From positions 62,001 through 126,000 of the IMG/VR virus record IMGVR_UViG_3300037264_008423: a stretch of 64,000 nt of DNA. The stretch is one strand, 5' to 3'. The translations under genes were made by a program, and so were the position numbers. This document shows positions 10,037 through 59,822 of the stretch, one piece after another; within the stretch, counting starts at the first letter, position 1, and each line of letters starts with the position of its first letter. Under the pieces are notes generated by a model, which ran no database searches, had not been told where the DNA came from, and saw only the letters and a list, made by a program, of their open reading frames with translations.

Positions 10037-10221
10037 ACCCTGTCGGAGCGTTGTTTTGCGCCGAAACCAGACCCCGTGAGTCGGCATTTGCACTCTGCCG
10101 TGGCGTCTGGAGCGAGGCGGAAAGTGAAGTGGTTCGGGTCCAAAGTTTGTGCAGGCTATGCGAGTATGGACACCGGATACGTCCGCTGGTTCGGTTTACC
10201 CGCGCCCTGCCCCGACAGGGT
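10037..10221 (+). ncRNA. Putative structured RNA containing a delocalised CRISPR-repeat copy
   Basis: Bracketed by a 10-bp inverted repeat ACCCTGTCGG (10037-10046) / CCGACAGGGT (10212-10221), with internal stems. 10142-10164 AAAGTTTGTGCAGGCTATGCGAG matches the 3' 23 nt of the array repeat at 21/23. Confidence 0.6.
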
Positions 10222-10235
10222 TTTGTATTTACGGT

Positions 10236-13200
10236 GTGCAGTTGGAGAATTTAGACGATGACGTGAGCGTGAAGGATCTGGCGGACTATCCGCGCTACCT
10301 GATCCGCAACCCTCAAGGCGACTACTGGTCCAATGACTGGGGATGGGTGGACTACGCCAGCGCCGACATTTTCAGTCACCTGGAAAAAGAGCGGTTCGAC
10401 CTGCCTTCGGAGGGTCAATGGGTTCCCCTGGCCGAATCCCGTCCGGTTATTGGTTTCCCCGGCAATGACTTGAAGGCGCTCCTGGGAGAGGATTTTGTAA
10501 ACAAAGCGGACGCCTTCCTTCAGGAGCAGGGTATGCTGTGCCTCCTGGAGTGGCACCCGCAGGGCCGTCGGGTGGGCCAGGCCCAGGCGGCGGGTCAGGC
10601 GCTCACGGCGCGCTTGAGCCTGAACAGCGCCGACAGCCAGCTCTTGCGCCGCGAGGGGAGCCTGAAGCTTTTAGATCAGTTGCGGGAGAGCGTGCGCGGG
10701 TTTCTGCCCAAGAGCGCCGAGAGCCGGGTCCGGGTGGTTCCCCAGCGTCCCCAGTATGACCGCTGGAACGACCGCTGGAACCTGGAGCTGGTGGTCTTGG
10801 AGGCGTCCGAGGACGACTTGGAGTCCAAAGAGGTCTATTTTGACGATGATCCACCTGAATTTGCCGCTCCCCAGGGCCTTAGCCCGGAGGGAGAGCGCGC
10901 CCGGCAGATCATTGTCCAGGTGCTTCGGCGCAATGGCGATCTGGATTCACGCGGTCAAAAGCATGTTTTCTATACCCCCGAACAATGGGCGCTAAAGGCG
11001 GATGAGCATGTTAAGGACGGGGTATTAGTGGTCGTTCACGATGGCGGCAGCCACGCTCCTTACTTTCACATGTCCTACGCGGCTGAATTAATGCTGAGCC
11101 GGATGGACCTGGCCCTGCGCCGGGAGGGATTTCAAATTTACCCCTACGCCCCTCATTACTCGGTGATTGCTCCGGTGGAACATGACGAGGCTAACCAGTG
11201 GTTTGTGCGCCAGATCGAGGATTGGTTCCAGCGAAACCCGGACCCGGCTGCGGTGCCCGGCGAGGAGCCGCCGCCCCCGGCAGCCACAGGGAATGTCCCG
11301 GAGAGCTTGGAGGACGATGACGATGTAAACTGGAAGGACCTGCAACTGCCGCTGGACAAAGAGGCGGCGATCCGGCACGTGTTTCGGCAGGCGGGGCTGA
11401 AGATCACGTCGATTCAGGAAGTGCCTGAAGACCAGGACTGGGGTGAGCTGGGGCACGCCCAGCGCATCATCGTCACCCGTGTTCCGCCCAATCCCGATCA
11501 GCCCTGGACTACGGACATAAACGCGTGGGAGGCAGTCGATGAGTTTTGTTTACGAATCAAGTCGGCCCTCTATGAGATCCTGGACACGGATGACATCGAG
11601 TGGCTGAGAAACTGGGGCCTGGAGGACCAAGCGCCGGAGGGCCGCCATTGGTATATCTGGTGGTATATCGGCGACCCGGACATCAAGGAAGAGCGGGAAA
11701 TGAATGAATCGGACGAGGACGACTTCGACGTGAAGGACTACTCGGACGACATCCCGCAATCGGATGACTTCCAGGCTTACCTGCTTCAGCGCGGATTTCG
11801 CAAGCTTTCGGGTCAGATGGGAGACTACTTCAAGAAGCTGCCTGCTGCTTACGCGCGGGTTCGGGTTTATCAGTATCCCAACTATGTCAGCTACCTGCTG
11901 GGCCTGAAGGAGGGCAACCACTGGTTTAAGTTGAGCGAGATGACCAACGCCTACCGGGTCCTGTCGGTTTTGCAGCAGCGAGGGCTGTTCGACGTGCGGG
12001 AGGGCCTGGACGAGGAGTTTGGAGCCGATGACGACCCGGAGCTGTATCTCACGCCCACGCCGAACCTTCAGGAGCGGTGGAATCAGTTCGAGGCGGCCTG
12101 GCGCAGTCAGTGGGCGCTCATACAGCGCGGGGTTAATTTCGGCCAGCGCACCGCTTACCTGGAGGGGATCATGCCCTCGCACCTGCGATGGCGCGCCGCG
12201 TTCCAAGAGGTTCAACGGCTCGTTTACGAGCACTTGGGGGGCGGACGCATCGCCGATTTCAAGTATCACCGGGATGGCTACGTCCTGTTTCACATCTACG
12301 ACCTGGGCGGCGTGGTGGAGAGCGAGGCGGAGAGTGAGGCGGATGATGTGGACTGGAAGGAGATCTCTTCCTATCCCAAGCCCAGCGCGCGGGAGGTCCG
12401 GGAAGCCATGAAGCGCCGGGGGATCGTCTATAATCGCCTGGTGCGCGGCAAGGATGTGGTGACCTTCCTGGGCTGGTTTAAGCGGGGTCAACTCGAACTG
12501 GATGTGCTGGCCCTGTTGCGGGAAGCGGCGGCGGAAGCGGGTCTTGACCAGGAGCACGTCCAGTTTTTCTATATGCCCGGCGCGGGTGAGGTCGCGATCA
12601 TCGCGGCGCGGACGGGCCTGTTGGAAAGCGAGGAGGATGAGGACTTTGACACTAGAACCTTGAAGGATGTGTCTGAAACTGGCAAGTTAGTGCCGGAAAT
12701 TGTGGCGGCGATGATCAAAAATGGGGTCATCCATATGATGGTTCGCAGGCCGTGGCAGCCCCCGCCCCACGACTTGCTGCTTTTTATGGGCTTGTGGCAG
12801 GCAGGCAAGACGGACCAGGAGGCCGCCCAGGTTTGCGCGGCGATCCTAAGAGATTTGCGCATTCCCATTACTTCCAGCTTGGACGACTGGTTCAACTATA
12901 TGCCCGGCTCCGGCGATTTCGACCTGGCGCTGCCTGCTTACCTGGTCTTGGACTGGGAGAGGTATGTGGTGGAATCCCAGGCTGGCCTGGTCCAAAAGAT
13001 CATCGAGGCCCAAGGCACGGTTCTAAACGTGCAAGTGGCAGACCGAGAGGAACTTGTCACGATTCAAGGCGAATGGAAGCCCGGAGCCACGGTTCAAGCT
13101 CTTGCCGAGGCCATTAGCGTGGATGCCAATCGGATTCAGTATGACGCCAAAAATGGCGAATTTACGGTGCTGGCAACCCGGCAAGCCCTTGTGCAAGAGG

Positions 13201-14765
13201 ATCAGGCGGATGGCAAGGCCAGCGACACCAAACGGGTCGCCATTGTGGCGGTGTTTCGGCAGAAGCAGGACGATCCCGCCTACGAGTGCCTGGTCTGCAA
13301 GCGCGAGGGGCCGCCAGCGGAGGGCGAATGGGTGATCCCAGGTGGTCATGCCGAGGAGGGCGAGGAGATCAAAGTCGCCGCGCGGCGTGAGTTGCAGGAA
13401 GAGGCGCACGTGGACCTGGGCGACCTGACCTTTGTTAAGACCATGCCCAATGAGACGGGGGACTTGGAAGTCCATGTCTTTGGAGCGATCTTGCCGGAAG
13501 GGGAGAGGGCCAAGGCCGGGGATGACGCGGAAAAGGTGAAATGGCTGCCCCTGGACGATCTGCCCAAGCTGAGCCTGGATAATGACAATTTGATCCGGGA
13601 AGTGGCCGAGGCGATGGAACTGCAACGGCTGCCCTCGGTGGACGAGAGCCTGCCCCCGCGCCTGGCCGACCAGATTCGGTCAAAGATAGCGGCCCTGAAG
13701 CCGCGCCGCGCGAGCCGCGCCGGTATGAGCTTCGAGGTTCAACAGCCAGAGGGATTTGTGGATCGGCTCATCGAGGGGATTGAGCGGGAAGCGGAGCAGT
13801 TGCAAGCCGACGCTCAGCCCGAACTGCGTCTCATGGACCTGATCGAGGATGCCTACAGCCAGACGGGCACCTATTTGTTTCCAGACGACCAGCAGGACGT
13901 GGAGCGATTGGCGCGCGTGCTGGTTCCTTTATTCAAAAAACCAGCCGGACGGCGGATCAAGGAGAGCGCGGACGCTCCCCCGCGCTATGGCACCGTTACC
14001 GACGAGGTAGTGCCTGCCCTGGAACAAGCTCTGGTGGAGATCTTTGGCCAGCGTTATGACTGGCTGGTGCCCCACGTGATCCAGCACATGGACCCGGAGA
14101 TCTCTTTGATCGCGATGGAGGGTGATCGCGTGATCGGTTTCTACATCCTGGGCCGCCGTTCGATCTTGGACGGCGTTAAGAGCGAGCACCTGAAGCCCAC
14201 TGAGGATTTGAAGCCCTATCGGCAGCGCCAGGGCATTGAGGGGGTAGCCCTGGGCATTGTGCCGGATCGCCGGGGCACGGGCCTGGGCAGCCGGTTCAAA
14301 GACTATCCACAAACCCTGGGCGCGGATTATATGTGGGGTCTGCAAATGCATGATCTGGATAACCTGAGCCACTGGCTCAAGCGCCGCCGCATTGTGGCGC
14401 GCAACCCGGAGATGGTCGCGACCCTCCAGGACTTTAAACCGGGGGCGGTAGCGGAGGCCAGCGAAGAGGATTTCGAGGCCAAGGACTTGGAAGATGATTT
14501 GCTGAATGACGAGCATTTTCAAAAGTTTGCCCAGGAGCACGGCCTACTCTACCACCCTGGCGCTAAAATGGTGCGCGACGTGCTGGATAATGTTTATGGT
14601 TCCATTTGGTTTAAGACCGGCCCCTATTTAAATCGGGAGGCCACGGTCCGCCAGTGGACCCAGGTGTTTTCCGACTATTTCAAGATCGATCCCGCCCGGA
14701 TGAAAGTGGCCTATTACCCGCCCAGTGGCGACATTATGGTCATGGTCACGAATCTGGTTCTGTAG
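10236..14765 (+). CDS. Modular polyprotein-like protein with 7 acidic tag linkers; cargo includes Nudix and GNAT domains
   Basis: Likely start GTG 10236 (TATTTA-N4-GTG). Nudix box GGHAEEGEEIKVAARRELQEEAHV at about 13341. GNAT motif A VALGIVPDRRGTGLG at about 14245. Recurring E(S/A)-acidic-KD tags. Confidence 0.75.
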   Translation: MQLENLDDDVSVKDLADYPRYLIRNPQGDYWSNDWGWVDYASADIFSHLEKERFDLPSEGQWVPLAESRPVIGFPGNDLKALLGEDFVNKADAFLQEQGMLCLLEWHPQGRRVGQAQAAGQALTARLSLNSADSQLLRREGSLKLLDQLRESVRGFLPKSAESRVRVVPQRPQYDRWNDRWNLELVVLEASEDDLESKEVYFDDDPPEFAAPQGLSPEGERARQIIVQVLRRNGDLDSRGQKHVFYTPEQWALKADEHVKDGVLVVVHDGGSHAPYFHMSYAAELMLSRMDLALRREGFQIYPYAPHYSVIAPVEHDEANQWFVRQIEDWFQRNPDPAAVPGEEPPPPAATGNVPESLEDDDDVNWKDLQLPLDKEAAIRHVFRQAGLKITSIQEVPEDQDWGELGHAQRIIVTRVPPNPDQPWTTDINAWEAVDEFCLRIKSALYEILDTDDIEWLRNWGLEDQAPEGRHWYIWWYIGDPDIKEEREMNESDEDDFDVKDYSDDIPQSDDFQAYLLQRGFRKLSGQMGDYFKKLPAAYARVRVYQYPNYVSYLLGLKEGNHWFKLSEMTNAYRVLSVLQQRGLFDVREGLDEEFGADDDPELYLTPTPNLQERWNQFEAAWRSQWALIQRGVNFGQRTAYLEGIMPSHLRWRAAFQEVQRLVYEHLGGGRIADFKYHRDGYVLFHIYDLGGVVESEAESEADDVDWKEISSYPKPSAREVREAMKRRGIVYNRLVRGKDVVTFLGWFKRGQLELDVLALLREAAAEAGLDQEHVQFFYMPGAGEVAIIAARTGLLESEEDEDFDTRTLKDVSETGKLVPEIVAAMIKNGVIHMMVRRPWQPPPHDLLLFMGLWQAGKTDQEAAQVCAAILRDLRIPITSSLDDWFNYMPGSGDFDLALPAYLVLDWERYVVESQAGLVQKIIEAQGTVLNVQVADREELVTIQGEWKPGATVQALAEAISVDANRIQYDAKNGEFTVLATRQALVQEDQADGKASDTKRVAIVAVFRQKQDDPAYECLVCKREGPPAEGEWVIPGGHAEEGEEIKVAARRELQEEAHVDLGDLTFVKTMPNETGDLEVHVFGAILPEGERAKAGDDAEKVKWLPLDDLPKLSLDNDNLIREVAEAMELQRLPSVDESLPPRLADQIRSKIAALKPRRASRAGMSFEVQQPEGFVDRLIEGIEREAEQLQADAQPELRLMDLIEDAYSQTGTYLFPDDQQDVERLARVLVPLFKKPAGRRIKESADAPPRYGTVTDEVVPALEQALVEIFGQRYDWLVPHVIQHMDPEISLIAMEGDRVIGFYILGRRSILDGVKSEHLKPTEDLKPYRQRQGIEGVALGIVPDRRGTGLGSRFKDYPQTLGADYMWGLQMHDLDNLSHWLKRRRIVARNPEMVATLQDFKPGAVAEASEEDFEAKDLEDDLLNDEHFQKFAQEHGLLYHPGAKMVRDVLDNVYGSIWFKTGPYLNREATVRQWTQVFSDYFKIDPARMKVAYYPPSGDIMVMVTNLVL

Positions 14766-22525: not shown

Positions 22526-22560
22526 CGGGGGGCTAGGGCCGTCCGTCCGGTATTTAGGTG

Positions 22561-23010
22561 ATGACGGATAATATTCACATCTTTGGCACTCTGACCGCTG
22601 TGGCACTGCAAATGTATGCCATTATCCTGGCGCAGCCTTTTCGCCGGTTTATGCCGCGCCGGACCTGGCAGCTTTTCATGGCGCTCAACCTGTGCGTCCT
22701 CAGTCGCCTCGTCCTCAGCTTCATGGAAATTGTTTTTGACTGGCGCGGCAATGCCTACGAGAACCTGGCGGTTTTGGTGGGCCTGTTCGTGTCCAGCTTC
22801 ATGCTGCTAGCCGTGATCAGCTTGCGCGCTTACATCATGAGCGAGCGCAAAAGGTTGGTGGAGTTAGCCAGGGCCACGCTCGATCTGGCCCTGGAAACCA
22901 AGAAGGAGGATTCCGTGGCCTACCAACTGGCGCTTCACTTCATCGAGCTGAGAGAAACCCAGGACACGGCCATTGCCGACGCCAAGAACGGCTCGAAACT
23001 CCGTAGTTAA
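22561..23010 (+). CDS. Membrane protein (3 predicted hydrophobic helices, soluble C-terminus)
   Basis: Hydrophobic stretches; TATTTA-N4-ATG start. Confidence 0.6.
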   Translation: MTDNIHIFGTLTAVALQMYAIILAQPFRRFMPRRTWQLFMALNLCVLSRLVLSFMEIVFDWRGNAYENLAVLVGLFVSSFMLLAVISLRAYIMSERKRLVELARATLDLALETKKEDSVAYQLALHFIELRETQDTAIADAKNGSKLRS

Positions 23011-23013
23011 GGC

Positions 23014-23640
23014 GTGCTGGGCAGTCGTCATAGTTTTCGGGACATCAATGTCCGTCATCCGCAGTCCACGGCGTTTCGCGCCGGGGAGGAACGCTGGATT
23101 ACCCAAGCCTCGGCGGCTGTGGCGCTGGAAATTGTTTCGGCGGGGGCCTTCACCGACGCGCTGAGCCTGACCATCGTGGGCACGGGCAGTGTTTACATGC
23201 TTCAGACCGCCTACGACGTGGGCGCTGGCACGGACGCGCTGTCAATGGCGGCGAGTTTGGGCAACATCGGAGGCTATGACATCTACAATACCGTAAACAA
23301 CGGCAACATGGCCTTAGCGGTGTTTGGCACTCACTTCGAGGCGCTCTTGGACTTGCAAAGCGTGGGGACCAGCGCCCAGTCGATGGACCTCGCTTTGTTC
23401 GGCAGCTATCGTGAAGTGGTGTCGGCGGTGGATACCGGCACCGAGGCATGGCAGATGACGCTCTCCGTCATGGGCACTTACCTTCAGACGGTGACTTCAA
23501 CTGACGCTGGAACGGATACCAGCAGCCTGTCCCTGGGGGTGTTCGGCACCCATACGAGTGTCACGGTTCACGCCGGAACTTACGCGGAAAGCCAAAACAA
23601 CTTCATGGTGACTGTCTTTGGAACCTATCTCGCTATTTAA
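23014..23640 (+). CDS. Putative virion structural protein with internal ~30-aa repeats
   Basis: Repeated (V/F/M)GT...D.GT..L.L pattern. Confidence 0.5.
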   Translation: MLGSRHSFRDINVRHPQSTAFRAGEERWITQASAAVALEIVSAGAFTDALSLTIVGTGSVYMLQTAYDVGAGTDALSMAASLGNIGGYDIYNTVNNGNMALAVFGTHFEALLDLQSVGTSAQSMDLALFGSYREVVSAVDTGTEAWQMTLSVMGTYLQTVTSTDAGTDTSSLSLGVFGTHTSVTVHAGTYAESQNNFMVTVFGTYLAI

Positions 23641-23643
23641 GTT

Positions 23644-24867
23644 ATGAATTTGATTGCGTCAGTAGGCTATACTTTGCGCGGAGAGATCGAGGCCAGTATT
23701 GTGGAGCGCGGCCAGGTGGTGCGGCGGTTTCCGCGCCAGCGCAACTTGATTTTAAACCAGGGCTTGGATCAAATTGCCTCCCTCTACATCGCAAACTGTT
23801 TTCAATACGCGGCGATGGGTTCGGGCACCACGCCCACGGAGTCGGATAGCGGGGTGGAGACTGTGAATATCGTTTCCGGCACCGCTACGATCTCCACGAT
23901 TGGATTTTTGGCGGGTGACGCGACAGACGTGGGCAAGACCATCAAACTGGATACGTCAGGCAATACTTTCCTGGTTACGGGATTCACGAGCACCACCCAA
24001 TGCACGGTTAGCCCCAGTAGCACTATCGGGCCGGACACGTTCATCATTTACAACACCAACCAGACGGGTTTGACCACCGAGATTACCGGGGGCGGCGGCG
24101 CTTCACGGCGCACCAGCACTTATCTGACAGGCGCGCCTAATTGCCAGACCGTGACCACGGGCGCGGTGACCGTCCTGACCCGCACCTTTGATTTTTCCGT
24201 GGAGACGGGTCCCAATTCGTGTAATGAAGTGGGATTTGCCAGCACGTCCACGGTCGGTTCCAACCTGTTTTCCCGCATCAAGCTGCCCTCCACCGCCTCG
24301 CTCACAGCCGGACAGCAGCTACGGGTGAAGTATAGCGTGTCGGTTACGGTCTCTCCCATTACGCCGCAGACTATCGGCTCCTCACCCGTGGTGGGCTGGC
24401 CAGCCGCGACCGGCACCCTTCAGTGCGAGGAAATTCCCGTCGCTTTCATTCAGACCAATGGTTTTGTAGTCAGCACCAAAGCCTTCAACTCGGTCGATAG
24501 CAAATACTACTGCGGTTTCGGCGAGCCATCGACCACCGGCGACAACTTTACGACGATTTCCATGTCTTCCACGGCTCCGGCGCACGGCACCTACGGCGCG
24601 GCCAGATCGGCTTCGGCCTGGCTCACCCAGGAGGGGTATCGGCCCACGCTGAGCACCTACACGGTGGGCACCTATACGCGGGATCAGCTTTATACTTTTC
24701 TGGTCGGCCAGGCGAATCGAAGCGACTGGCGCGCGCTGTATTTGATGGATGCGGGTTCCGCCAGCAACGACGTGGTGTTCCTATACGTGTTTGACACGAT
24801 TCAGCAGAAGCTCAGCACACACACGCTGACCGTGGGCTTCCGGCACACCTGGGGCCGCGTTCTATAA
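23644..24867 (+). CDS. Putative baseplate/tail-fibre-associated structural protein
   Basis: RNLILNQGLD, AMGSGTTP and NEVGF...LFSRI motifs typical of phage tail-fibre/baseplate adaptor proteins; Thr-rich. Confidence 0.6.
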   Translation: MNLIASVGYTLRGEIEASIVERGQVVRRFPRQRNLILNQGLDQIASLYIANCFQYAAMGSGTTPTESDSGVETVNIVSGTATISTIGFLAGDATDVGKTIKLDTSGNTFLVTGFTSTTQCTVSPSSTIGPDTFIIYNTNQTGLTTEITGGGGASRRTSTYLTGAPNCQTVTTGAVTVLTRTFDFSVETGPNSCNEVGFASTSTVGSNLFSRIKLPSTASLTAGQQLRVKYSVSVTVSPITPQTIGSSPVVGWPAATGTLQCEEIPVAFIQTNGFVVSTKAFNSVDSKYYCGFGEPSTTGDNFTTISMSSTAPAHGTYGAARSASAWLTQEGYRPTLSTYTVGTYTRDQLYTFLVGQANRSDWRALYLMDAGSASNDVVFLYVFDTIQQKLSTHTLTVGFRHTWGRVL

Positions 24868-24870
24868 AGC

Positions 24871-25080
24871 GTGCTGGAGATACTTAAGTTTACATTTTCA
24901 AGCTTTTGGATCTGGCTGGGGACCTGCGCGCTGATTTTCTGCGTGACCTCGGCGTTCGCTTCCATGATCGGGTTTTTCCGGGCGCTCCTCCGCGAGCACC
25001 GCTGCTGCCACTGTGAACATAAGAGTATCGAACGTATTAATCGCCAATCGGGCAACGATCAACGGCAACATTTATCCTAG
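24871..25080 (+). CDS. Small membrane protein
   Basis: MLEILKFTFSSFWIWLG...; hydrophobic. Confidence 0.55.
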   Translation: MLEILKFTFSSFWIWLGTCALIFCVTSAFASMIGFFRALLREHRCCHCEHKSIERINRQSGNDQRQHLS

Positions 25081-25399
25081 AGAGGTAGTGCGCAAAGCCG
25101 CCGCGCTCGCCCAGGAAAAGGTCAAGCAGCGCAAGCTCCTGGTCCATGCTGGAGATCCGCCGACGCTGCGCAACGCGGTGGGGATCGTTACCCGGCTCGA
25201 CGAAGATGGCGGCCAGGTTTCCATGTCCGTGGAAATGCTGCCCGTCATGGAAGCGCAAGCCGTGGCCCAGGAAATCAAAACGGGCAGATTGAAGCTGGCT
25301 CCACGAGGGACGGGAACCGTGGTGGACGGGGGGGTGATCCAGGACGATTTTCAACTGGAGTCCTGGGACCTGGCGTTCCCCAAAAAGGAAACGCCATGA
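25013..25399 (+). CDS. T4 gp21-like prohead core protease paralogue, probably catalytically dead
   Basis: NGNIYPREVV, RGTGTV and VIQDDFQLESWDL resemble the S80 protease motifs (N.N.R.YP, SSRG.G, V.DDF.L..FD). The catalytic-Ser motif reads LAPRG. Confidence 0.65.
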   Translation: MNIRVSNVLIANRATINGNIYPREVVRKAAALAQEKVKQRKLLVHAGDPPTLRNAVGIVTRLDEDGGQVSMSVEMLPVMEAQAVAQEIKTGRLKLAPRGTGTVVDGGVIQDDFQLESWDLAFPKKETP

Positions 25400-25572
25400 C
25401 TAAGCCTATTAAAGAACCCAAGATTAGCACTCGCCTGCTGGCACCCGCCACGCGCACGGTCATTCAGATTGATTTGGGCGGCCTGACGGCGCGCGAAAAG
25501 TGGCTGAAGGTGGACGCTTGGCTCGAAAAGCTGCGCTCTAAGTTGGCGCTGTCCAAATCCGGTAGTTAGGGC

Positions 25573-28500
25573 GTGACGCGCGCCGAGCAAGCCATACGTA
25601 GTTTGGTTGAGGACGAGGACTTCGAGCTGAAGGACCTGGTGTCGGACTATGACGGGAATCCCATCCTGAAGCTGCCCCGTGGCCGGGAAGAGGTATTGGT
25701 CGAGTTAGGGGGTGAACTATACACAGGCACCGCCCAAACCTTATGGGACTGGCTGCACGATCCGTATATCTGGCGTTTTGTGATATGGGTGGACGGTCAC
25801 CTGGTTACCGGAATGCGAGGCAATGTCACTGACATCAACGATGCTGGTCTTTCCATCAAGCTCCTCGATCAGCAGGGGAACTACCTGCGCAAGACGGTTC
25901 AGAAATCTGAACCGGTTATCGGTCTTAATTCCCGCACGGAGAGGGGGCAGCGTCCGCCTGATGCGGTCGCGCTGGAGTTTCTCCCAGCGGGTTTTAGACT
26001 GAGCGAGTCCGAGGAAGAGGACTTTGACACCAAGGATCTGGTTGGAGAAGCGGTGTTGATGCCGGATACGGCGCAGGCAGCCGAGCTAACGGCGGAAGCT
26101 TTGGACGGGATCACGAAGGCCATCGAGGCGGGACCTAAGCTGGACTGGACTAAAAAGGAGTCAAAGGGTTTGTGGCTCAAGGAGTGGCCAGGACTACTGC
26201 ATAAGTTTAGCACGGACAGGGTAAAGCTGCGCTATTCGCCAGCGGGAACGTTTCATGCGGCTTATCAGTATGGTGGTTTGATTGTTATCTTTGTGCCGCC
26301 TTTGACCGAGATGGGGCCGGGCTACCGGCTGGACTTAACTCGGCGCACCTTGGAAAAACTTGTCCATCATGAGCTGGTGCATCACGCGCAATGGCAGCGC
26401 CATCAAGGCAAAAACAAGGGAACAATCAGCCGTAAAGGAGTTGCTCAAGACCCGGCTGCTTATTTTAACACAAAATCGGAGCTTATGGCCAGGGCGCACG
26501 ATTATGTCTTGGGTCTGGCGGGGCGCGTGGGTGGCTACAGCAACGGGAAGATCCTTTCCCGCTCGGAGGTCATCTACCGCATTCGGCAGCCCGGAGACGA
26601 GCGTGGGAGCCTTAACTTGAAGTATTTGACCCCCAAATCCAGACGACGTTTTTTCAAGTATGCTTACCAGTATGCTCAGCAGTTACCAGAGTCGGTCGAG
26701 GACGATTTCGAGACCAAGGACCTGGAGACCCAGGACCCGACCCGCCTGCGTATGCCGGTTGCTTTTGCCAACGTGCCGGAGGGGTTTGAGTTTAAAAAGG
26801 ACGATGGACAGGCCGTGCGCAAGCAGGGCACGGGCTACACGGTGGGCGGCGAGTTTCATAACCTGGGCAATCCAAAATACTGGTGCTACCCCGTGGACTG
26901 GGATCTGCCGACGATCAGTTCCTTTGGCCGGAAATGGTATCGCACGCGCCAACCGTTGCCCCCGCTGTCCAGGGCGCTGGAGTCAGTCGAGGACGATTTC
27001 GAGATCAAAGACCTGGAGCTGTCCGAGGAGGAATTGGATCTGCTGGCGGCTACGGAGGTCGCCGACCGGCTGAATCGGGCCGGGTTCAAGTTCACCATCG
27101 ATAAAAATCTGCACTTCATGCTGGATGACCGGATGCACGGTCGGGAAATCCGGTTGGGGCCAACGGTTCAGTTTATCTTGGAGCCGCGCAAGACCAATGC
27201 TGACCGGGGTGAGTCCTGGGTTAAAATGTGGACGCGCATTCAGTATATTCCCGATTACGGCGAATTTTATACTGTCTGGAAGAATCACTTGCAGCAGGTG
27301 GTGGGGGCAGAGAACCCCATTTGGATCTTTGGCAACAATGCCTATGAAATTACGATTCCCGTAGGCCCGTCCACGCAACAGAAGATGGTGGAGCGCCTGG
27401 CTGAGAAGATCCAGGAGTCCCAGCCTGCGGACCGGGAGCGGCTTGAAAAGGTTTACGATAAAATCTACAAGTTGGCGGAAGCGCACGGCCAGGAGTCCGA
27501 GGAGGATGATTTCGAGACTAAGGACCTGGAAACCAGCTCGGATGAAAGCCTGATCGTAGGCCACGCGACCGAGGGTCAGAGTCCCCATGATTTGGCGCTG
27601 CGCGTGAGCATGTATGGCTGGCAAAACCCGGTGTTGTCCGAGCCTGGCCCGGACGATCCCAGTTGGGAAGTGCGCTTTAATTATCCGCGCGGCGCGATCC
27701 CGGACAACGATCCCGCGCAAGTGGACCAGGCGGCCTGGCACGTGATCGAGCTGGCGGCGGCCATGTCCTTTCGGGGCCACATTCGGGTGACACGTGTCCA
27801 GGATGCCGACTATGACTTTGTTTTCCGCGTCGAGCCGCTGGTCCAGGAAAGCGAGGACGACGATGATGTGGACATGAAGGCGCTCTTCGACGATCCGCCC
27901 TCCGAGTGGCGCTACGTGGGAACGGTCCAGGTGGACCAGGACCAGGGTATCGAGCGCTTTGTATTTCGCAGACACGGCATAATTGATGAGACTTTGGAGA
28001 TGCATCTGCATGAGCAGGCCCCAGGGCGGTGGATCGTCAATTTTTACGTTCAGGGCGTGGGATTCCTGAGCCGCACGGAAATTCATGTCAACGGCTTGAC
28101 TCAGGCGTCGCACATCGCCCGGCAGCAGGCGACCGACTTTTTTACGGAAAACGGCTATCTGACTCCGATCACGGAGAGCCAGGAGCGGGAGACGCGCCGA
28201 TACAAGGTCACGGCGGACCCTGAGCACCTGGATCAGATCGAGCAGCTTTTCTGGTGGGTGAACAGCACGCATTCGGGCCACAGTGGCAGCGCCAAGATCT
28301 ACGTGGATGGCGACGGCGCGGCGCGGGTGGGGATCGAGAAAGAGGAGGGCGAGCTAAAGCGACCGGAGGAAGAGGTCCATTCCCGGTGCGACGGCGAGGC
28401 CGAGTTCTCGGTGTGCCTGGAGGATGAGGAGGACGACTTCGAGGTTAAAGACCTGGTGCCCGACCCGGCTTATATTCAGTGGGACCTGGTGGGGACCGCG

Positions 28501-29010
28501 CGTCATCCACAGCGGGTCACTCGTTACTATGAGCACGTCTCTGGCAATACGATGGCGCGGTTTAAGCTGTTCAAGGAACACATCAGTGACTACACGATCC
28601 TTTACACGCTGCCGCACCGTAACGTTTTAGGCGAGGATCGGTTCCAGGCTGATTCTTTTGAAGAGGCCGAGCAGATCGCCAAGAATAAGGCGTCGGAGTT
28701 CTTTTTGCACTACTGGGCGAATAAGGGCATACCCTTCGAGTCTAAAGCGGAGAGTCCGCCTGCCGTCAAAGCTTTGGCGGAATCCGATGACGGCCAGCTC
28801 CGGGTGGAGTTTGACGCCGGTCCCTGGCTGCAAGCCGCGACCGTGGACCAGGTGAAGGCGGCGCTGGAGAGCGCGGATGCCGTGGCCCTGGACCAGCGGA
28901 ACCATGCCGATCTGGACCGGTTTTTCGGCCAGGTGAGCGGGGGGTTTAAAGTTTACATTGATCCGCAAGAAATTGCCCATGCTCGCCCCGATGTCGTCAT
29001 CCCGGCGTAG
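25573..29010 (+). CDS. Modular polyprotein-like protein with 7 acidic tags; includes an HExxH zincin-like domain
   Basis: 1145 aa. HELVH at about 26368. Tags such as ESVEDDFETKDL, ESVEDDFEIKDL and ESEEDDFETKDL. Confidence 0.75.
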   Translation: MTRAEQAIRSLVEDEDFELKDLVSDYDGNPILKLPRGREEVLVELGGELYTGTAQTLWDWLHDPYIWRFVIWVDGHLVTGMRGNVTDINDAGLSIKLLDQQGNYLRKTVQKSEPVIGLNSRTERGQRPPDAVALEFLPAGFRLSESEEEDFDTKDLVGEAVLMPDTAQAAELTAEALDGITKAIEAGPKLDWTKKESKGLWLKEWPGLLHKFSTDRVKLRYSPAGTFHAAYQYGGLIVIFVPPLTEMGPGYRLDLTRRTLEKLVHHELVHHAQWQRHQGKNKGTISRKGVAQDPAAYFNTKSELMARAHDYVLGLAGRVGGYSNGKILSRSEVIYRIRQPGDERGSLNLKYLTPKSRRRFFKYAYQYAQQLPESVEDDFETKDLETQDPTRLRMPVAFANVPEGFEFKKDDGQAVRKQGTGYTVGGEFHNLGNPKYWCYPVDWDLPTISSFGRKWYRTRQPLPPLSRALESVEDDFEIKDLELSEEELDLLAATEVADRLNRAGFKFTIDKNLHFMLDDRMHGREIRLGPTVQFILEPRKTNADRGESWVKMWTRIQYIPDYGEFYTVWKNHLQQVVGAENPIWIFGNNAYEITIPVGPSTQQKMVERLAEKIQESQPADRERLEKVYDKIYKLAEAHGQESEEDDFETKDLETSSDESLIVGHATEGQSPHDLALRVSMYGWQNPVLSEPGPDDPSWEVRFNYPRGAIPDNDPAQVDQAAWHVIELAAAMSFRGHIRVTRVQDADYDFVFRVEPLVQESEDDDDVDMKALFDDPPSEWRYVGTVQVDQDQGIERFVFRRHGIIDETLEMHLHEQAPGRWIVNFYVQGVGFLSRTEIHVNGLTQASHIARQQATDFFTENGYLTPITESQERETRRYKVTADPEHLDQIEQLFWWVNSTHSGHSGSAKIYVDGDGAARVGIEKEEGELKRPEEEVHSRCDGEAEFSVCLEDEEDDFEVKDLVPDPAYIQWDLVGTARHPQRVTRYYEHVSGNTMARFKLFKEHISDYTILYTLPHRNVLGEDRFQADSFEEAEQIAKNKASEFFLHYWANKGIPFESKAESPPAVKALAESDDGQLRVEFDAGPWLQAATVDQVKAALESADAVALDQRNHADLDRFFGQVSGGFKVYIDPQEIAHARPDVVIPA

Positions 29011-29021
29011 TTATAGGCAGC

Positions 29022-30473
29022 GTGATCAGTGACACCAATATTTATCATCCGCAAGCGCGCGCCAGTCTCGCCTCTGAGCGCAACTGGATCACTTTTGTAG
29101 CCGCAGCGATTATGAGCGAAGCCCAAATTACCGCCGAGGCGGCCCTGCTCCTGGCCCAGCAAGCCTGGACCTTGGCCATTGCCGGAACCAACATCGGTCA
29201 AAATGCCTATAACCTGGCCAAGCTGGCTTGGGACTTGGCCAATGTCGGCACCAACGTGGGCACCAACGCCCTCAACGCGGCGGCAACCGCCCAGTCCACG
29301 GCGGAGCTGGCCCTGTCTCAGGGCGGGGGCGGCACCACCGTGTATGAGATCGCCGTGGCTGGCACCACGGTCGCCAACCATGCCTATGATATCGCCATCG
29401 CTGGCACGAGCGTGGCTAATCACGCCTACAACATCGCCATTGCGGGGACTCAGCGCGCCGACGAGGCGTATGATCTGGCGGCCATCGGCACCAACGTGGG
29501 CACTAACGCCCTGGTCCTGGCCCAAAGCGCCTACGATCTGGCCCTGGCGGGAGGCGGGGGCGGCGGGACCAGCACGGTTATTGCTACGGAAGCTTACAAC
29601 ATCGCGGTCAACGGCACGACCGTGGCCAATCATGCTTACAGCATCGCGGTTAGCGGCACGACCCTGGCCAATAGCGCCTACGTCCTGGCGACCACAGGCA
29701 CGAATGTGGCCAATCACGCCTACGTGATCGCGCAGGCCGGGACGAACCTGGCCCAGGCTTCATATAACATCGCGGTCAACGGGACCAACACCGCCAATTC
29801 GGCCCTGACCGTGGCCAACCAGTCCTGGACCTTGGCCAACACCGGCACGGCCCTGGCGCAGCGCGCTTACAATCTGGCGGCTATCGGCACCAACGTGGGC
29901 ACCAACGCCCTGGGCCTCGCCAACGCGGCGGGGGCTTTGGCGACCACGGGCAGCAACCTGGCCTGGCAGGCGTTTACCATTGCCAGCATATCGGGCGGCA
30001 ATGCCAGCCTGATGCTGCCGGTTCAAAGCGCCAAGCTGCCGACCACCGCCAACGCGACCATTGATGGGGCCAATACCCTCTGGCGTTTGCATTTTTCGCA
30101 GAACACGTCCGCCGCCTACCAGTTGATGATGCCCACCGATTTTGGCACCGGTTTGCACCTGCACGTGATGCTGGCCCTGGATGACGCGGTAGTCGGGCCT
30201 GCCAATGGTAATTTCAATGTCTATGTGGCCCGGACCGTGGATGGGGCGTTCGCCCCCGTTTATGACACGGCTAACGCGTTTACGTGGGCGCTGGGCGCGG
30301 CGGCTTTCGGGGCTAATGTCACGCAAAGCTTCAATGTGCCGCTGGCCAATGACGCGAGCGTGGTTGCGGGAGATTTCGTGGCGGTCAAAGTCGAGCGGGT
30401 CACCGACACCATTCACCCCGTGGGCATCAGCATGATCGCGGCGACCCTGGAATGGACTCGTCAAGTGTTTTAG
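29022..30473 (+). CDS. Repetitive fibre-like structural protein
   Basis: About 14-aa repeats A..AY.IA..GT; DNA repeat GGCACCAACGTGGGCAC(C/T)AACGCCCT at about 29247, 29487 and 29886; C-terminal beta domain. Confidence 0.65.
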   Translation: MISDTNIYHPQARASLASERNWITFVAAAIMSEAQITAEAALLLAQQAWTLAIAGTNIGQNAYNLAKLAWDLANVGTNVGTNALNAAATAQSTAELALSQGGGGTTVYEIAVAGTTVANHAYDIAIAGTSVANHAYNIAIAGTQRADEAYDLAAIGTNVGTNALVLAQSAYDLALAGGGGGGTSTVIATEAYNIAVNGTTVANHAYSIAVSGTTLANSAYVLATTGTNVANHAYVIAQAGTNLAQASYNIAVNGTNTANSALTVANQSWTLANTGTALAQRAYNLAAIGTNVGTNALGLANAAGALATTGSNLAWQAFTIASISGGNASLMLPVQSAKLPTTANATIDGANTLWRLHFSQNTSAAYQLMMPTDFGTGLHLHVMLALDDAVVGPANGNFNVYVARTVDGAFAPVYDTANAFTWALGAAAFGANVTQSFNVPLANDASVVAGDFVAVKVERVTDTIHPVGISMIAATLEWTRQVF

Positions 30474-58923: not shown

Positions 58924-59307
58924 ATGAAAGCGACTTTGGCTATTCTTAAGCACCTTTTAGAGGACGACGAAGAAGATTTTGACCTGAAAGACCTGGCGGA
59001 CACCCCGCCGTGCCCTGTGTTTGCGCTCGTCGATGGACTTACCGGCTTTGCTGACCCCATCGGCAGCGCCATTTACCGCAATTGGAAGATTTATTACGAC
59101 AGCCGTCCCAATGATGCTTACGAAATCGACTGGATTCGCTACAACCACACCCCCAATAAGACCTACAGTCGGCGGAGCCAGCGCCGGTTTGAGCAGGCGG
59201 TCCTGGACCGGGGCGGGGGAGGCCGCCTTGAAATCAAAGTGCTGGACGGCACCCTGGGGCCGCACCGGTGGAGTGTGCGCGTGCAGAGTTCCGGTTCTTG
59301 CGCGTGA
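58924..59307 (+). CDS. Small protein with an N-terminal acidic tag
   Basis: ILKHLLEDDEEDFDLKDL. Confidence 0.65.
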   Translation: MKATLAILKHLLEDDEEDFDLKDLADTPPCPVFALVDGLTGFADPIGSAIYRNWKIYYDSRPNDAYEIDWIRYNHTPNKTYSRRSQRRFEQAVLDRGGGGRLEIKVLDGTLGPHRWSVRVQSSGSCA

Positions 59308-59822
59308 TGGCAAAGTCAGAAAAAAAGCGTAAGAGCCGCAAGAGCCGCGCCGGGCAGGAGAAGTGTGCGACGAAGTGGTGCCGCAACCGGCGCGCCGCCA
59401 AAGTGACCCGCTACGTGAGCGCCTCCGGCAAGACCAAGGTTTACCATAATTTTCTGCGCCACTGCTGGAAGTGCCGCTCGCGCATGTTGAGGGAGAGCCA
59501 ACCGGCCACATACGTCCTTAATGCCATCCGAAACCGGGCCAGGCAACGGGGGCTGCCTTTTACGATTACCCTCCCGGAGTTCAGGAAATTTTGCGCCGAA
59601 ACAAACTATTTGGAGTTGCGTGGACGCAAGCCGGATAGCTTGTCCATCGACCGGAAAAATCACGACCAGGGCTACCATATTTGGAACATCCGGGTGTCTC
59701 CCTTTAATCTAAACTGCACCAACGGGCATACCGTGTCCGGTCGCGTGTGCGCCCAAAATGAGCGCGTGCCCGAGGAGTGTGACTACGCCGTGCCTACCGA
59801 TCCCGACACCGAACCTTTTTAA
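59307..59822 (+). CDS. HNH-like nuclease-domain protein
   Basis: CATKWC and CWKC zinc sites; SLSIDRKNHDQGYHIWNIRV. Confidence 0.55.
   Translation: MAKSEKKRKSRKSRAGQEKCATKWCRNRRAAKVTRYVSASGKTKVYHNFLRHCWKCRSRMLRESQPATYVLNAIRNRARQRGLPFTITLPEFRKFCAETNYLELRGRKPDSLSIDRKNHDQGYHIWNIRVSPFNLNCTNGHTVSGRVCAQNERVPEECDYAVPTDPDTEPF

What the first reader, a model, noticed from the sequence alone, without database searches (positions are those of the whole stretch)
25013..25399. Catalytically altered prohead-protease paralogue right upstream of a tagged polyprotein
Seen: gp21/S80-like motifs are retained, but the catalytic-Ser segment reads LAPRG rather than SSRG, the His loop is shortened, and the protein is only 128 aa. 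It lies 173 bp before the 7-tag ORF. Inference: a dead protease fold could serve as a tag-binding adaptor or an inhibitor that regulates cargo loading or cleavage. It also supports a Glu-specific maturation protease elsewhere in the genome.
Basis: partly seen in the sequence, partly recalled or inferred. Interest (0 to 1): 0.6.

Follow-up and report, generated by a model that had tools for sequence, protein, structure and literature searches.

The report
Dead prohead-protease paralogue in jumbo phage
A 128-residue gene in a 238-kb uncultivated jumbo phage encodes a trimmed copy of the T4-type capsid-maturation protease that has lost its catalytic serine and histidine; it belongs to a large, almost undescribed family of such "pseudoproteases" in big phages, and what they do is still unknown.

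Summary
ORF 25013-25399 (+) encodes 128 aa with the T4 gp21 (Peptidase_S77) fold. With a 70-sequence alignment the AlphaFold2 model reaches pLDDT 95.8. It matches PDB 5JBL at Z 14.2, rmsd 2.2 A, over 124 residues.

Four independent alignments put Ala96 (motif LAPRG) at the catalytic Ser140. They put Asp48, not His45, at the catalytic His85. So both dyad residues are gone.

The active enzyme sits 147 kb away in the same genome. It is a 538-aa protease-scaffold fusion (LEHP and VSSRG motifs) just upstream of a gp23-like capsid gene.

The 128-aa protein is not a recent decayed copy. It belongs to an all-viral family of about 117-170-aa proteins. Among 73 short members, His is kept in 1 and Ser in 13. 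Among 24 canonical proteases the counts are 23 and 24. The fold motifs (Tyr21, G-x-G) are kept throughout.

Two other large phages examined also carry one canonical and one non-catalytic copy. Short protease paralogues in giant phages were noted once before (SPN3US gp117, 2017), with no function assigned.

The proposed adaptor or inhibitor role is untested. The complex prediction gave no verdict. Adjacency to a tagged giant protein holds only in the closest relatives. The acidic tag occurs at 19 sites in about 10 ORFs across the genome.

The parts
25013..25399 (+). Gene for the 128-aa non-catalytic gp21-like protein (pseudoprotease)
   Evidence: ORF. Codon-position GC is 0.65/0.40/0.70, like the neighbouring genes. 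PHROG 207 at E 5.6e-5. 100 relatives at E<1e-3. AF2 model pLDDT 95.8. 5JBL match at Z 14.2.
25061..25078 (+). NGNIYP motif (residues 17-22), a fold signature shared with active proteases
   Evidence: Tyr21 is invariant in 73/73 short and 24/24 canonical sequences. Asn17 is kept in 55/73 and 24/24. This motif lies upstream of the public gene call's start at 25088.
25145..25156 (+). HAGD (residues 45-48): Asp48 occupies the catalytic-His column; His45 lies three residues upstream
   Evidence: hhalign against the own protease and against T4 gp21. L-INS-i alignment. His column: canonical 23/24 His, short family 1/73. Column 45 alternates Y (15) and H (14).
25295..25315 (+). LAPRGTG (residues 95-101): Ala96 replaces the catalytic Ser; the G-x-G strand is kept
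   Evidence: Ser column: canonical 24/24, short family 13/73. Gly99 65/73 and Gly101 69/73.
25367..25369 (+). Asp119 (in WDL), in the conserved-Asp column that may be the third triad residue
   Evidence: Asp column: canonical 24/24, short family 19/73. A His-Ser-Asp triad for gp21-type enzymes is taken from PMC5694885 section 17. That paper does not number the T4 Asp, so assigning this column to the triad is my inference.
25396..25569 (+). 57-codon ORF filling the gap between the pseudoprotease and the polyprotein; status uncertain
   Evidence: Its start overlaps the stop codon in ATGA. GC3 is 0.69. No family match. Small ORFs of 62, 66 and 38 aa, plus one running off the contig end (45 aa or more), follow relatives P0003, P0009, P0008 and P0013. 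Their homology was not tested.
25573..29010 (+). 1145-aa polyprotein with 7 acidic tags, the downstream neighbour
   Evidence: Tags start at window positions 25612, 26014, 26698, 26989, 27502, 27859 and 28429. The N-terminal tag is conserved in the giant proteins downstream of relatives P0004 and P0002. No Pfam domain in any of the 7 modules.

Best explanation
Shown: the gene encodes a folded, non-catalytic paralogue of the T4-type (MEROPS S77) prohead protease.
- It covers the core of the fold, corresponding to gp21 residues 37-173.
- It lacks gp21's first ~36 residues, and the scaffold-like tail that this genome's own active protease carries.
- It has Ala at the catalytic Ser and Asp at the catalytic His.
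- It belongs to an old, fast-evolving, all-viral family of about 117-170-aa pseudoproteases. In the three large-phage genomes I examined, a family member coexists with one canonical protease.

Inferred: the catalytic columns are free to vary across the family, while the fold motifs and the G-x-G strand next to the former nucleophile are among its most conserved features. The protein therefore most likely works by binding rather than cutting.

My preferred mechanism, at about 0.3: it binds the same Glu-containing linear sites (L-x-E followed by the acidic tag) that the active protease recognises on packaged cargo. In this phage that would shield or escort the adjacent tagged polyprotein until it is inside the prohead.

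Almost as likely, at about 0.25: it binds the active protease itself. See the rival explanations.
For: Identity:
- (31 of 70 family members hit PF03420).

Loss of catalysis:
-.
- triad columns in 24 canonical sequences are His 23, Ser 24, Arg 24, Asp 24. In 73 short sequences they are His 1, Ser 13, Arg 15, Asp 19. Only 1 of 73 short sequences keeps both His and Ser.

Selection on the fold:
- Tyr21 is kept in 73/73, Gly99 in 65/73, Gly101 in 69/73 and Asp112 in 63/73.
- The alignment alone raises the AF2 model from pLDDT 34 to 95.8.

Not a recent duplicate:
- In the tree, the genome's own 538-aa protease sits in the canonical clade (SH-aLRT 94). The query sits in an all-short group of 37 (SH-aLRT 93).

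Coexistence with an active copy:
- This genome.
- The 595-kb phage LR756511.
- Serratia phage BF.

Link to cargo:
- In the three nearest relatives with context, a giant protein follows within 0-2 genes (2054 aa; 1642 aa).
- Where DNA was available, that protein starts with the same helix-plus-acidic-tag sequence.
- The sites have the form L-x-E then [S/D]-x-[E/D]-D-D-F-[E/D]-x-K-D-L, and they occur at 19 places in about 10 ORFs. This fits the Glu-specific cleavage known for T4 and phiKZ-type proteases (PMC5694885).
Against: - There is no direct evidence of binding. The complex prediction with the N-terminal tag scored 0.00, which the tool says is uninformative.
- Adjacency to a tagged protein is not a family-wide feature. 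In the close relatives it can be explained by shared ancestry.
- The pseudoprotease carries no tag of its own, so nothing shows that it enters the prohead.
- Cleavage at the tags is itself only inferred. The polyprotein has an HELVH motif, so a self-processing metallopeptidase, as proposed for polyvalent proteins (PMC5512222), could cut it instead.
- I could not inspect the model coordinates, so I have not confirmed that a substrate groove is retained.
Confidence: 0.5

Rival explanations
1. Regulator of the active protease. The dead copy keeps the oligomerisation surface of gp21-type proteases and co-assembles with the 538-aa enzyme, as cFLIP does with caspase-8. This would hold the enzyme inactive in the cytoplasm or tune its activation in the prohead.
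For: - A canonical protease is the only partner that co-occurs in all three genomes examined.
- T4 gp21 is described as pentameric, with activation linked to assembly (PMC9958956).
- Herpesvirus homologues of the fold are solved as both monomers and dimers (PDB titles).
- Variable gene neighbourhoods across the family fit a partner that is always present better than a clade-specific cargo.
Against:
- The 128-aa protein lacks the N-terminal about 36 residues and the C-terminal tail. If these carry the assembly contacts, it could not co-assemble.
- Pairwise identity to the genome's own protease is low: 33% over 61 residues.
Confidence: 0.25
2. Anti-defence decoy. The non-cutting protease look-alike binds host immune sensors that detect prohead-protease activity or the protease itself. 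It would mask their bait loops without triggering them.
For: - Prohead proteases are reported to activate CBASS by cutting a CD-NTase loop (bioRxiv 10.64898/2026.03.04.709575).
- Distant family members lie among accessory or NAD-metabolism genes (Nudix, NAMPT, Sir2 in Serratia phage BF), beside a JAB / E1 gene set with an intervening 95-aa ORF ending in Gly, or beside an RlaP nucleotidyltransferase.
- Here the gene sits next to a multi-module giant protein that resembles a polyvalent protein.
Against: - The case is purely circumstantial.
- The host is unknown, and no defence system is linked.
- In this phage the gene lies in a block with tail-fibre-like and virion-type genes.
Confidence: 0.12
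3. Non-functional relic of a duplicated protease gene.
For: - The catalytic residues are lost and both ends are truncated.
- There is no recognisable Shine-DalgarRené-type ribosome-binding sequence before the GTG start, although the neighbouring genes lack one too.
Against: - The family has at least 70 clusters at 50% identity, with full-length conservation and an invariant Tyr.
- The model is very confident.
- Codon-position GC is typical of real genes.
- The reading frame is intact.
- The tree shows an old split, not recent decay.
Confidence: 0.06
4. Still an active peptidase that uses non-canonical residues, for example His45 with a nearby Thr.
For: - His45 is conserved in 9 of the 10 closest relatives.
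- Thr100 and Thr102 flank the G-x-G strand.
- Some family members keep Ser: Serratia phage BF gp116 has LSSRG, and 13 of 73 short sequences have Ser.
Against: - Column 45 alternates His and Tyr across the family, which suggests a structural role.
- Only 1 of 73 members has both His and Ser in the catalytic columns.
- Ala at the nucleophile position is the same change used to inactivate gp21 for crystallography (5JBL).
Confidence: 0.04

Closest known systems
T4 gp21 prohead protease (Peptidase_S77, PDB 5JBL)
   Same: - Same fold: VIA Z 14.2, rmsd 2.2 A, 124 of 128 residues aligned to gp21 residues 37-173; Foldseek E 2e-7.
- Shared motifs: N-G-R-x-Y-P, G-x-G and D-D-Y/F.
- The family profile matches 5JBL at E 1e-14.
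   Different: - Catalytic Ser140 is Ala96 and catalytic His85 is Asp48.
- The N-terminal about 36 residues and the C-terminal tail are missing.
- The gene is not next to portal, scaffold or capsid genes.
- A separate, intact S77 protease already fills that role in this genome.
SPN3US gp117 and the short prohead-protease paralogues of giant phages (201phi2-1 gp206, 145 aa; PhiPA3 gp143, 136 aa), described by Ali et al. 2017 (PMC5694885, section 17)
   Same: - A second, short, diverged copy of the prohead protease in a genome of at least 200 kb that also has the real enzyme.
- The catalytic His does not align.
- Function unknown.
- A 124-aa protein of the phiKZ-like phage Phabio is a structural match to the model (BFVD E 2.5e-5).
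   Different: - Those proteins branch from the S80 (phiKZ gp175) side and are reported to keep Ser and Asp. This one is S77-like and has lost Ser too.
- Sequence kinship to gp117 was not shown: hhalign E 0.11.
Serratia phage BF gp116 (154 aa, annotated 'capsid maturation protease') and the 144-aa uncharacterised protein of Yersinia phage fHe-Yen9-04
   Same: - Cultured-phage members of the same short family. The family profile matches BF gp116 at E 5e-28.
- The Yersinia phage protein is the best BFVD match, at E 3e-12 and 28% identity.
- BF also has a canonical protease next to its portal, scaffold and capsid genes.
   Different: - BF gp116 keeps the SSRG serine but has no His.
- It lies among PhoH, Nudix, Sir2 and NAMPT genes, not next to a tagged giant protein.
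T4 capsid-targeting sequences and gp21 cleavage sites; phiKZ/SPN3US propeptides
   Same: Short N-terminal or internal sites ending in Glu mark proteins that are packaged into the head and cut there. The L-x-E plus acidic tag sites found here resemble such sites.
   Different: - The conserved 9-residue acidic extension after the Glu has no described counterpart.
- Seven sites in one 1145-aa chain is unusual.
- Cleavage has not been shown here.

Membership tests
Peptidase_S77 (T4 gp21) as an active prohead protease | gp21 / herpesvirus-protease fold | tested here: met
   AF2 model pLDDT 95.8. 5JBL match at Foldseek E 2e-7 and TM 0.78. VIA Z 14.2, against about 7 for herpesvirus proteases.
Peptidase_S77 (T4 gp21) as an active prohead protease | Significant match to the family's sequence model | tested here: inconclusive
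   The protein alone gives no Pfam hit at E<=1 and PHROG 207 at E 5.6e-5. The profile of its 70-member family hits 5JBL at E 1e-14 and T4 gp21 at E 2e-12. 31 of 70 members hit PF03420.
Peptidase_S77 (T4 gp21) as an active prohead protease | Catalytic serine (Ser140, first S of VSSRG) | tested here: not met
   Ala96 occupies this column in every alignment.
Peptidase_S77 (T4 gp21) as an active prohead protease | Catalytic histidine (His85, in the H-P motif) | tested here: not met
   Asp48 is in the column. His45 lies 3 residues upstream.
Peptidase_S77 (T4 gp21) as an active prohead protease | Conserved aspartate (W-D-V/L), candidate third triad residue | tested here: met
   Asp119 aligns with the column that is Asp in 24/24 canonical sequences. 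A His-Ser-Asp triad is taken from PMC5694885; assigning this particular column to the triad is my inference.
Peptidase_S77 (T4 gp21) as an active prohead protease | Gene in the head module, next to scaffold and capsid genes, and/or fused to a scaffold or targeting extension | tested here: not met
   The neighbours are a tail-fibre-like gene and the polyprotein. There are no terminal extensions. The head-module slot is filled by the 538-aa paralogue.
Short prohead-protease paralogues of giant phages (SPN3US gp117 type) | Second, shorter copy in a genome that also has a validated-type prohead protease | tested here: met
   Two matches in the 238-kb genome: 128 aa and 538 aa.
Short prohead-protease paralogues of giant phages (SPN3US gp117 type) | Catalytic His not aligned, while Ser and Asp are retained | tested here: not met
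   His is absent and Asp is present, but Ser is replaced by Ala96.
Short prohead-protease paralogues of giant phages (SPN3US gp117 type) | Detectable sequence kinship to gp117 | tested here: inconclusive
   hhalign of the family profile against the single gp117 sequence gives E 0.11. The alignment is co-linear but not significant. There is a structural match to a short Phabio protein.
T4 Inh (protein inhibitor of gp21) and T4 gp68 (prohead core protein) | Sequence similarity | tested here: not met
   hhalign E 0.34 for Inh and E 0.2 for gp68.

The most novel reading that the evidence does not exclude
The short S77-like pseudoproteases are a dedicated class of 'cleavage-site readers'. They have lost catalysis but kept the peptide groove, and they recognise the Glu-type motifs of the maturation protease. 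In other lineages it would mask the same motifs from, or decoy, host immune sensors that monitor prohead-protease activity.
Probability: 0.15. Interest if true: 0.75.

Novelty: new member of a known kind. Interest (0 to 1): 0.42.

Why it matters
Jumbo phages pack dozens of proteins into their heads and cut them with a Glu-specific protease. How cargo is chosen, and how the protease is kept quiet before assembly, is poorly understood.

- **A widespread family.** A conserved, catalytically dead copy of that protease appears in many large phages. Cultivable examples include Serratia phage BF and Yersinia phage fHe-Yen9-04.
- **A testable candidate.** This makes it a concrete candidate regulator or reader of the maturation system.
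- **An annotation warning.** Such genes are currently labelled "capsid maturation protease" or called with a truncated start.
- **A separate lead.** The genome-wide acidic tag found alongside it is a candidate packaging or cleavage signal in its own right.

Tried and rejected
- **Single-sequence AF2.** The fold was useless (pLDDT 34). It was replaced by the alignment-based model.
- **phmmer of the protein against PDB.** It gave only a chance hit to an esterase (E 1.5).
- **Word-index protein search.** It found only the protein itself.
- **The search for related loci.** The single protein found no relative in IMG/VR.
- **Relatives of the active protease in IMG/VR.** They exist only as fragments of at most 23 kb, so no complete sister genome was available to test synteny.
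- **Complex prediction.** The pseudoprotease with polyprotein residues 1-40 scored ipSAE 0.00. This is no verdict and is not evidence either way.
- **T4 gp68 and T4 Inh.** Tested as possible known counterparts; both are unrelated.
- **SPN3US gp117.** Not significantly similar by hhalign.
- **Four large tandem-repeat hits in the big search.** P0006 (2074 aa), P0012 (3767 aa), P0039 (1547 aa) and P0058 (455 aa) score by summing many weak per-repeat matches. I treated them as spurious.
- **Pfam on the seven polyprotein modules.** Nothing was found. The HELVH motif therefore remains an unconfirmed hint of a metallopeptidase.
- **Promoter and terminator scan.** Nothing above the shuffled background near the gene.
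- **tblastn of family members against cultured phages.** It mostly returned canonical proteases. Short members in cultured phages were reached only through the profile and through structure.
Full report
**Setting.** The window is bases 62001-126000 of a 238,436-bp IMG/VR virus record judged 96% complete, so this is an uncultivated jumbo phage. GC content is about 58%. Most of its proteins match no described family.

**The observation.**
- ORF 25013-25399 (+) starts with GTG and encodes 128 aa.
- Its codon-position GC (0.65/0.40/0.70) equals that of the neighbouring long genes.
- The public gene call begins at 25088 and gives 103 aa. That start removes the N-G-x-I-Y-P motif, which every homologue has about 10-20 residues from its N-terminus.
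- In the sequence, an in-frame TGA lies at 24965-24967, and GTG 25013 is the only canonical start between it and the motif. So 25013 is the real start.
- The next long ORF begins 173 nt downstream and carries seven acidic tags. The gap between them holds a 57-codon ORF.

**Homology and fold.**
- Alone, the protein matches no Pfam model. It matches PHROG 207, "head maturation protease", at E 5.6e-5.
- An exhaustive phmmer search of 1.84 billion cluster representatives gave 100 hits at E<1e-3.
  - About 70 are proteins of 117-170 aa that align over the whole query.
  - About 25 are canonical proteases of 250-560 aa.
  - Four are tandem-repeat proteins that score by summing weak repeats; I treated them as spurious.
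- A profile of the 70 short proteins (alignment A1) matches T4 gp21 in PDB 5JBL at E 1e-14 and T4 gp21 by hhalign at E 2e-12. 31 of the 70 members reach PF03420.
- With A1 as the alignment, AlphaFold2 gives pLDDT 95.8 and pTM 0.86. Without it the model scores pLDDT 34.
- The model's best PDB match is 5JBL. Foldseek gives E 2e-7 and TM 0.78. VIA-align gives Z 14.2, rmsd 2.2 A, with 124 residues aligned to gp21 residues 37-173. Herpesvirus proteases follow at Z of about 6-8.

**Catalytic residues.**
- 5JBL is the H85A/S140A mutant. In its sequence the first S of VSSRG and the H of NHP are Ala.
- Ala96 falls on Ser140 in BLASTP against the genome's own protease, in the profile alignment to 5JBL, in hhalign and in a 97-sequence L-INS-i alignment.
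- The same alignments put Asp48, followed by Pro49, on the H-P motif. His45 falls three residues upstream, in a column that alternates Tyr (15) and His (14) across the family.
- So the second refutation criterion, "an intact Ser-His dyad on proper alignment", is also not met.
- The segment after the His position is about 7 residues shorter than in canonical enzymes.
- Asp119 is retained, in a column that is Asp in all canonical sequences.

**A family, not an accident.** Counts from the 97-sequence alignment:

| Column | Canonical proteases (n=24) | Short proteins (n=73) |
|---|---|---|
| His | 23 | 1 |
| Ser | 24 | 13 |
| Arg | 24 | 15 |
| Asp | 24 | 19 |
| Tyr21 | 24 | 73 |
| Gly99 | 24 | 65 |
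| Gly101 | 24 | 69 |
| Asp112 | 23 | 63 |

- Only one short protein keeps both His and Ser.
- The residue after the former nucleophile is Pro in 39 of 73 short proteins, against Ser in 19 of 24 canonical ones. This is a signature of the short family.
- In a maximum-likelihood tree the canonical enzymes, including this genome's own, form one group (SH-aLRT 94). The query lies in an all-short group of 37 (SH-aLRT 93). A single origin of the short form is not excluded. With only 135 columns, most deeper forks are unresolved.
- ESM Atlas neighbours are all-viral clusters of 114-143 aa.

**The active paralogue.**
- The genome has exactly two matches to PHROG 207 and to A1.
- The second match, at G000:C1:234235-235851, is a 538-aa protein with LEHP and VSSRG motifs. 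It matches PF03420 at E 1e-15, has a long Ala/Pro-rich and coiled C-terminal half, and lies directly upstream of a gp23-like capsid gene.
- Its protease domain resembles gp21 of hundreds of T4-like and other large phages at 30-38% identity.

**Other genomes.**
- The 595-kb uncultured phage LR756511 has a 222-aa canonical protease (DHP and MSSRG motifs) followed by a scaffold. It also has a 297-aa protein whose protease-like domain has Met and Arg in the His and Ser columns.
- Serratia phage BF (357 kb) has gp253, a canonical protease between its portal and its scaffold and capsid genes. It also has gp116, 154 aa, annotated "capsid maturation protease". gp116 has no His but keeps SSRG, and it lies among PhoH, Nudix, Sir2, NAMPT and RNA-ligase genes.
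- The best BFVD structural match to the model is a 144-aa uncharacterised protein of Yersinia phage fHe-Yen9-04 (E 3e-12). A 124-aa protein of the phiKZ-like phage Phabio also matches.

**Neighbourhood.** For the three nearest relatives a context was recovered.

| Relative | Identity to query | Gene order downstream |
|---|---|---|
| P0004 | 36% | 121 aa, then directly a 1642-aa protein |
| P0003 | 41% | 118 aa, 62 aa, 291 aa, then 2054 aa |
| P0002 | 40% | 127 aa, 156 aa, then a protein cut by the contig end |

- These orders come; the identities are.
- Where DNA was available, the giant protein begins with the same short helix plus acidic tag as the 1145-aa polyprotein here.
- The gene upstream of P0004 is homologous by eye to window ORF 22558-23010. 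These are therefore related phages, and the synteny may simply be inherited.
- More distant members sit elsewhere. One lies between a JAB peptidase, a 95-aa ORF ending in Gly, and a ThiF/E1 gene. Another follows an RlaP-type nucleotidyltransferase.

**The tag.**
- A relaxed pattern finds 19 sites in about 10 ORFs across the genome.
  - Seven are in the polyprotein.
  - Three are in a 1538-aa protein with a Nudix domain.
  - Three are in a 1190-aa protein on the minus strand.
  - The rest are single sites, mostly within the first 20-160 residues of smaller proteins.
- Nearly all sites read L/A/V-x-E, then S/D/A, then an acidic run, then F-[D/E]-x-K-D-L.
- The Glu with Leu at P3 matches the T4 gp21 cleavage rule and resembles the A/S/G-x-E rule of phiKZ-type proteases. 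Cleavage just before the acidic block by the 538-aa enzyme is therefore a reasonable inference, but it is not shown.
- The polyprotein also has an HELVH motif. Polyvalent proteins of phages are proposed to self-process with a zincin domain (PMC5512222). No Pfam model supports such a domain here.

**Mechanism.**
- Shown: the fold, the loss of the dyad, conservation across the family, coexistence with an active copy, and clade-specific adjacency to tagged cargo.
- Inferred: a binding role. I rank the options as follows.
  - Binder of Glu/tag sites on cargo: about 0.3.
  - Regulator of the active protease through co-assembly: about 0.25.
  - Anti-defence decoy: about 0.12. This is prompted by the report that prohead proteases trigger CBASS and by the accessory-gene neighbourhoods.
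  - Non-functional relic: about 0.06.
  - Cryptic active enzyme: about 0.04.
  - The remainder is unassigned.
- The one complex prediction allowed returned no verdict.

**Comparison with what is known.**
- Ali et al. 2017 (PMC5694885, section 17) reported that SPN3US gp117 and short proteins of 201phi2-1 and PhiPA3 (145 and 136 aa) are diverged paralogues of the prohead protease. They called this unprecedented and assigned no function. In those proteins Ser and Asp align but His does not.
- The present protein is the same kind of thing on the S77 branch, with Ser lost as well. Direct sequence kinship to gp117 was not demonstrable.
- T4 Inh, the known protein inhibitor of gp21, and the T4 core protein gp68 are unrelated.
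- I found no paper describing the short S77-like family or its systematic loss of the triad. This reflects the held library only.

**Verdict.** I classify the protein as a new member of a known but barely studied kind. Interest is moderate.

Noticed in passing
Window 10809, 11316, 14463 (+); 25612-28429 (+, seven sites); 51171, 52668, 53355 (-); 58969 (+); 62246 (-). Outside the window: genome positions 150541, 152490, 153266, 153524.: The acidic tag (L-x-E, then S/D, an acidic run, F-[D/E]-x-K-D-L) is a genome-wide motif, with 19 sites in about 10 ORFs. It often lies within the first 20-160 residues (stop-to-stop frame), after a short amphipathic helix. It looks like a packaging and/or cleavage signal for head cargo.
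   Followed up: partly
Window 58924-59307 (+) versus 58957-59511 (-): A 127-aa plus-strand ORF carries a perfect N-terminal tag (residue 20). It overlaps a longer minus-strand ORF in a minus-strand gene block. The tag suggests that the plus-strand ORF is the real gene.
   Followed up: no
Window 10149-14765 (+): A 1538-aa protein has three tag sites and a Nudix hydrolase domain at residues about 1044-1148 (PHROG 1198, E 2e-17). It is a second multi-module, tagged giant protein.
   Followed up: no
Window 26386-26400 (polyprotein residues 272-276): The second module of the polyprotein has an HELVH (HExxH) motif with a Glu about 40 residues downstream, reminiscent of the zincin peptidase modules of polyvalent proteins. 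No Pfam model matched.
   Followed up: partly
Window 24871-25080 (+): A 69-codon ORF with a hydrophobic, membrane-like N-terminal half overlaps the first 68 nt of the pseudoprotease gene in another frame. GC3 of its non-overlapping part is 0.79, so it may be a real small membrane protein.
   Followed up: no
Window, gene starts at 23644, 24871, 25573, 29022: None of these starts, nor 25013, has a recognisable Shine-Dalgarno sequence. Several are preceded within about 10 nt by TAA or TAG. The host may not use Shine-Dalgarno-led initiation.
   Followed up: no
Window 29022-30473 (+): A 483-aa protein is built of many repeats of an A-Y-N/D-L/I-A ... G-T-N-V/L-type unit and has no family match. It may be a fibre or decoration protein. 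A long antisense ORF overlaps it.
   Followed up: no
L005:897-2532 (JGI metagenome contig): A distant short family member (P0005) sits in the gene set JAB peptidase, 95-aa ORF ending in Gly (possibly ubiquitin-like; no family match was sought), pseudoprotease, ThiF/E1-like enzyme. This could be a phage-borne ubiquitin-like conjugation set.
   Followed up: no
L022:11881-12774 (phage LR756511, 595 kb): The non-catalytic paralogue of this huge phage is 297 aa. It has a hydrophobic, signal-like N-terminus with an RR pair and a Cys-rich C-terminal extension of about 120 aa, unlike the bare 128-aa form here.
   Followed up: no
Window 22558-23010 (+) and L004:78-551: A 150-aa predicted membrane protein is conserved between this phage and the relative that carries P0004. 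In the relative it lies directly upstream of the pseudoprotease gene. Here, two tail-fibre-like genes (23014-24867) lie in between.
   Followed up: no
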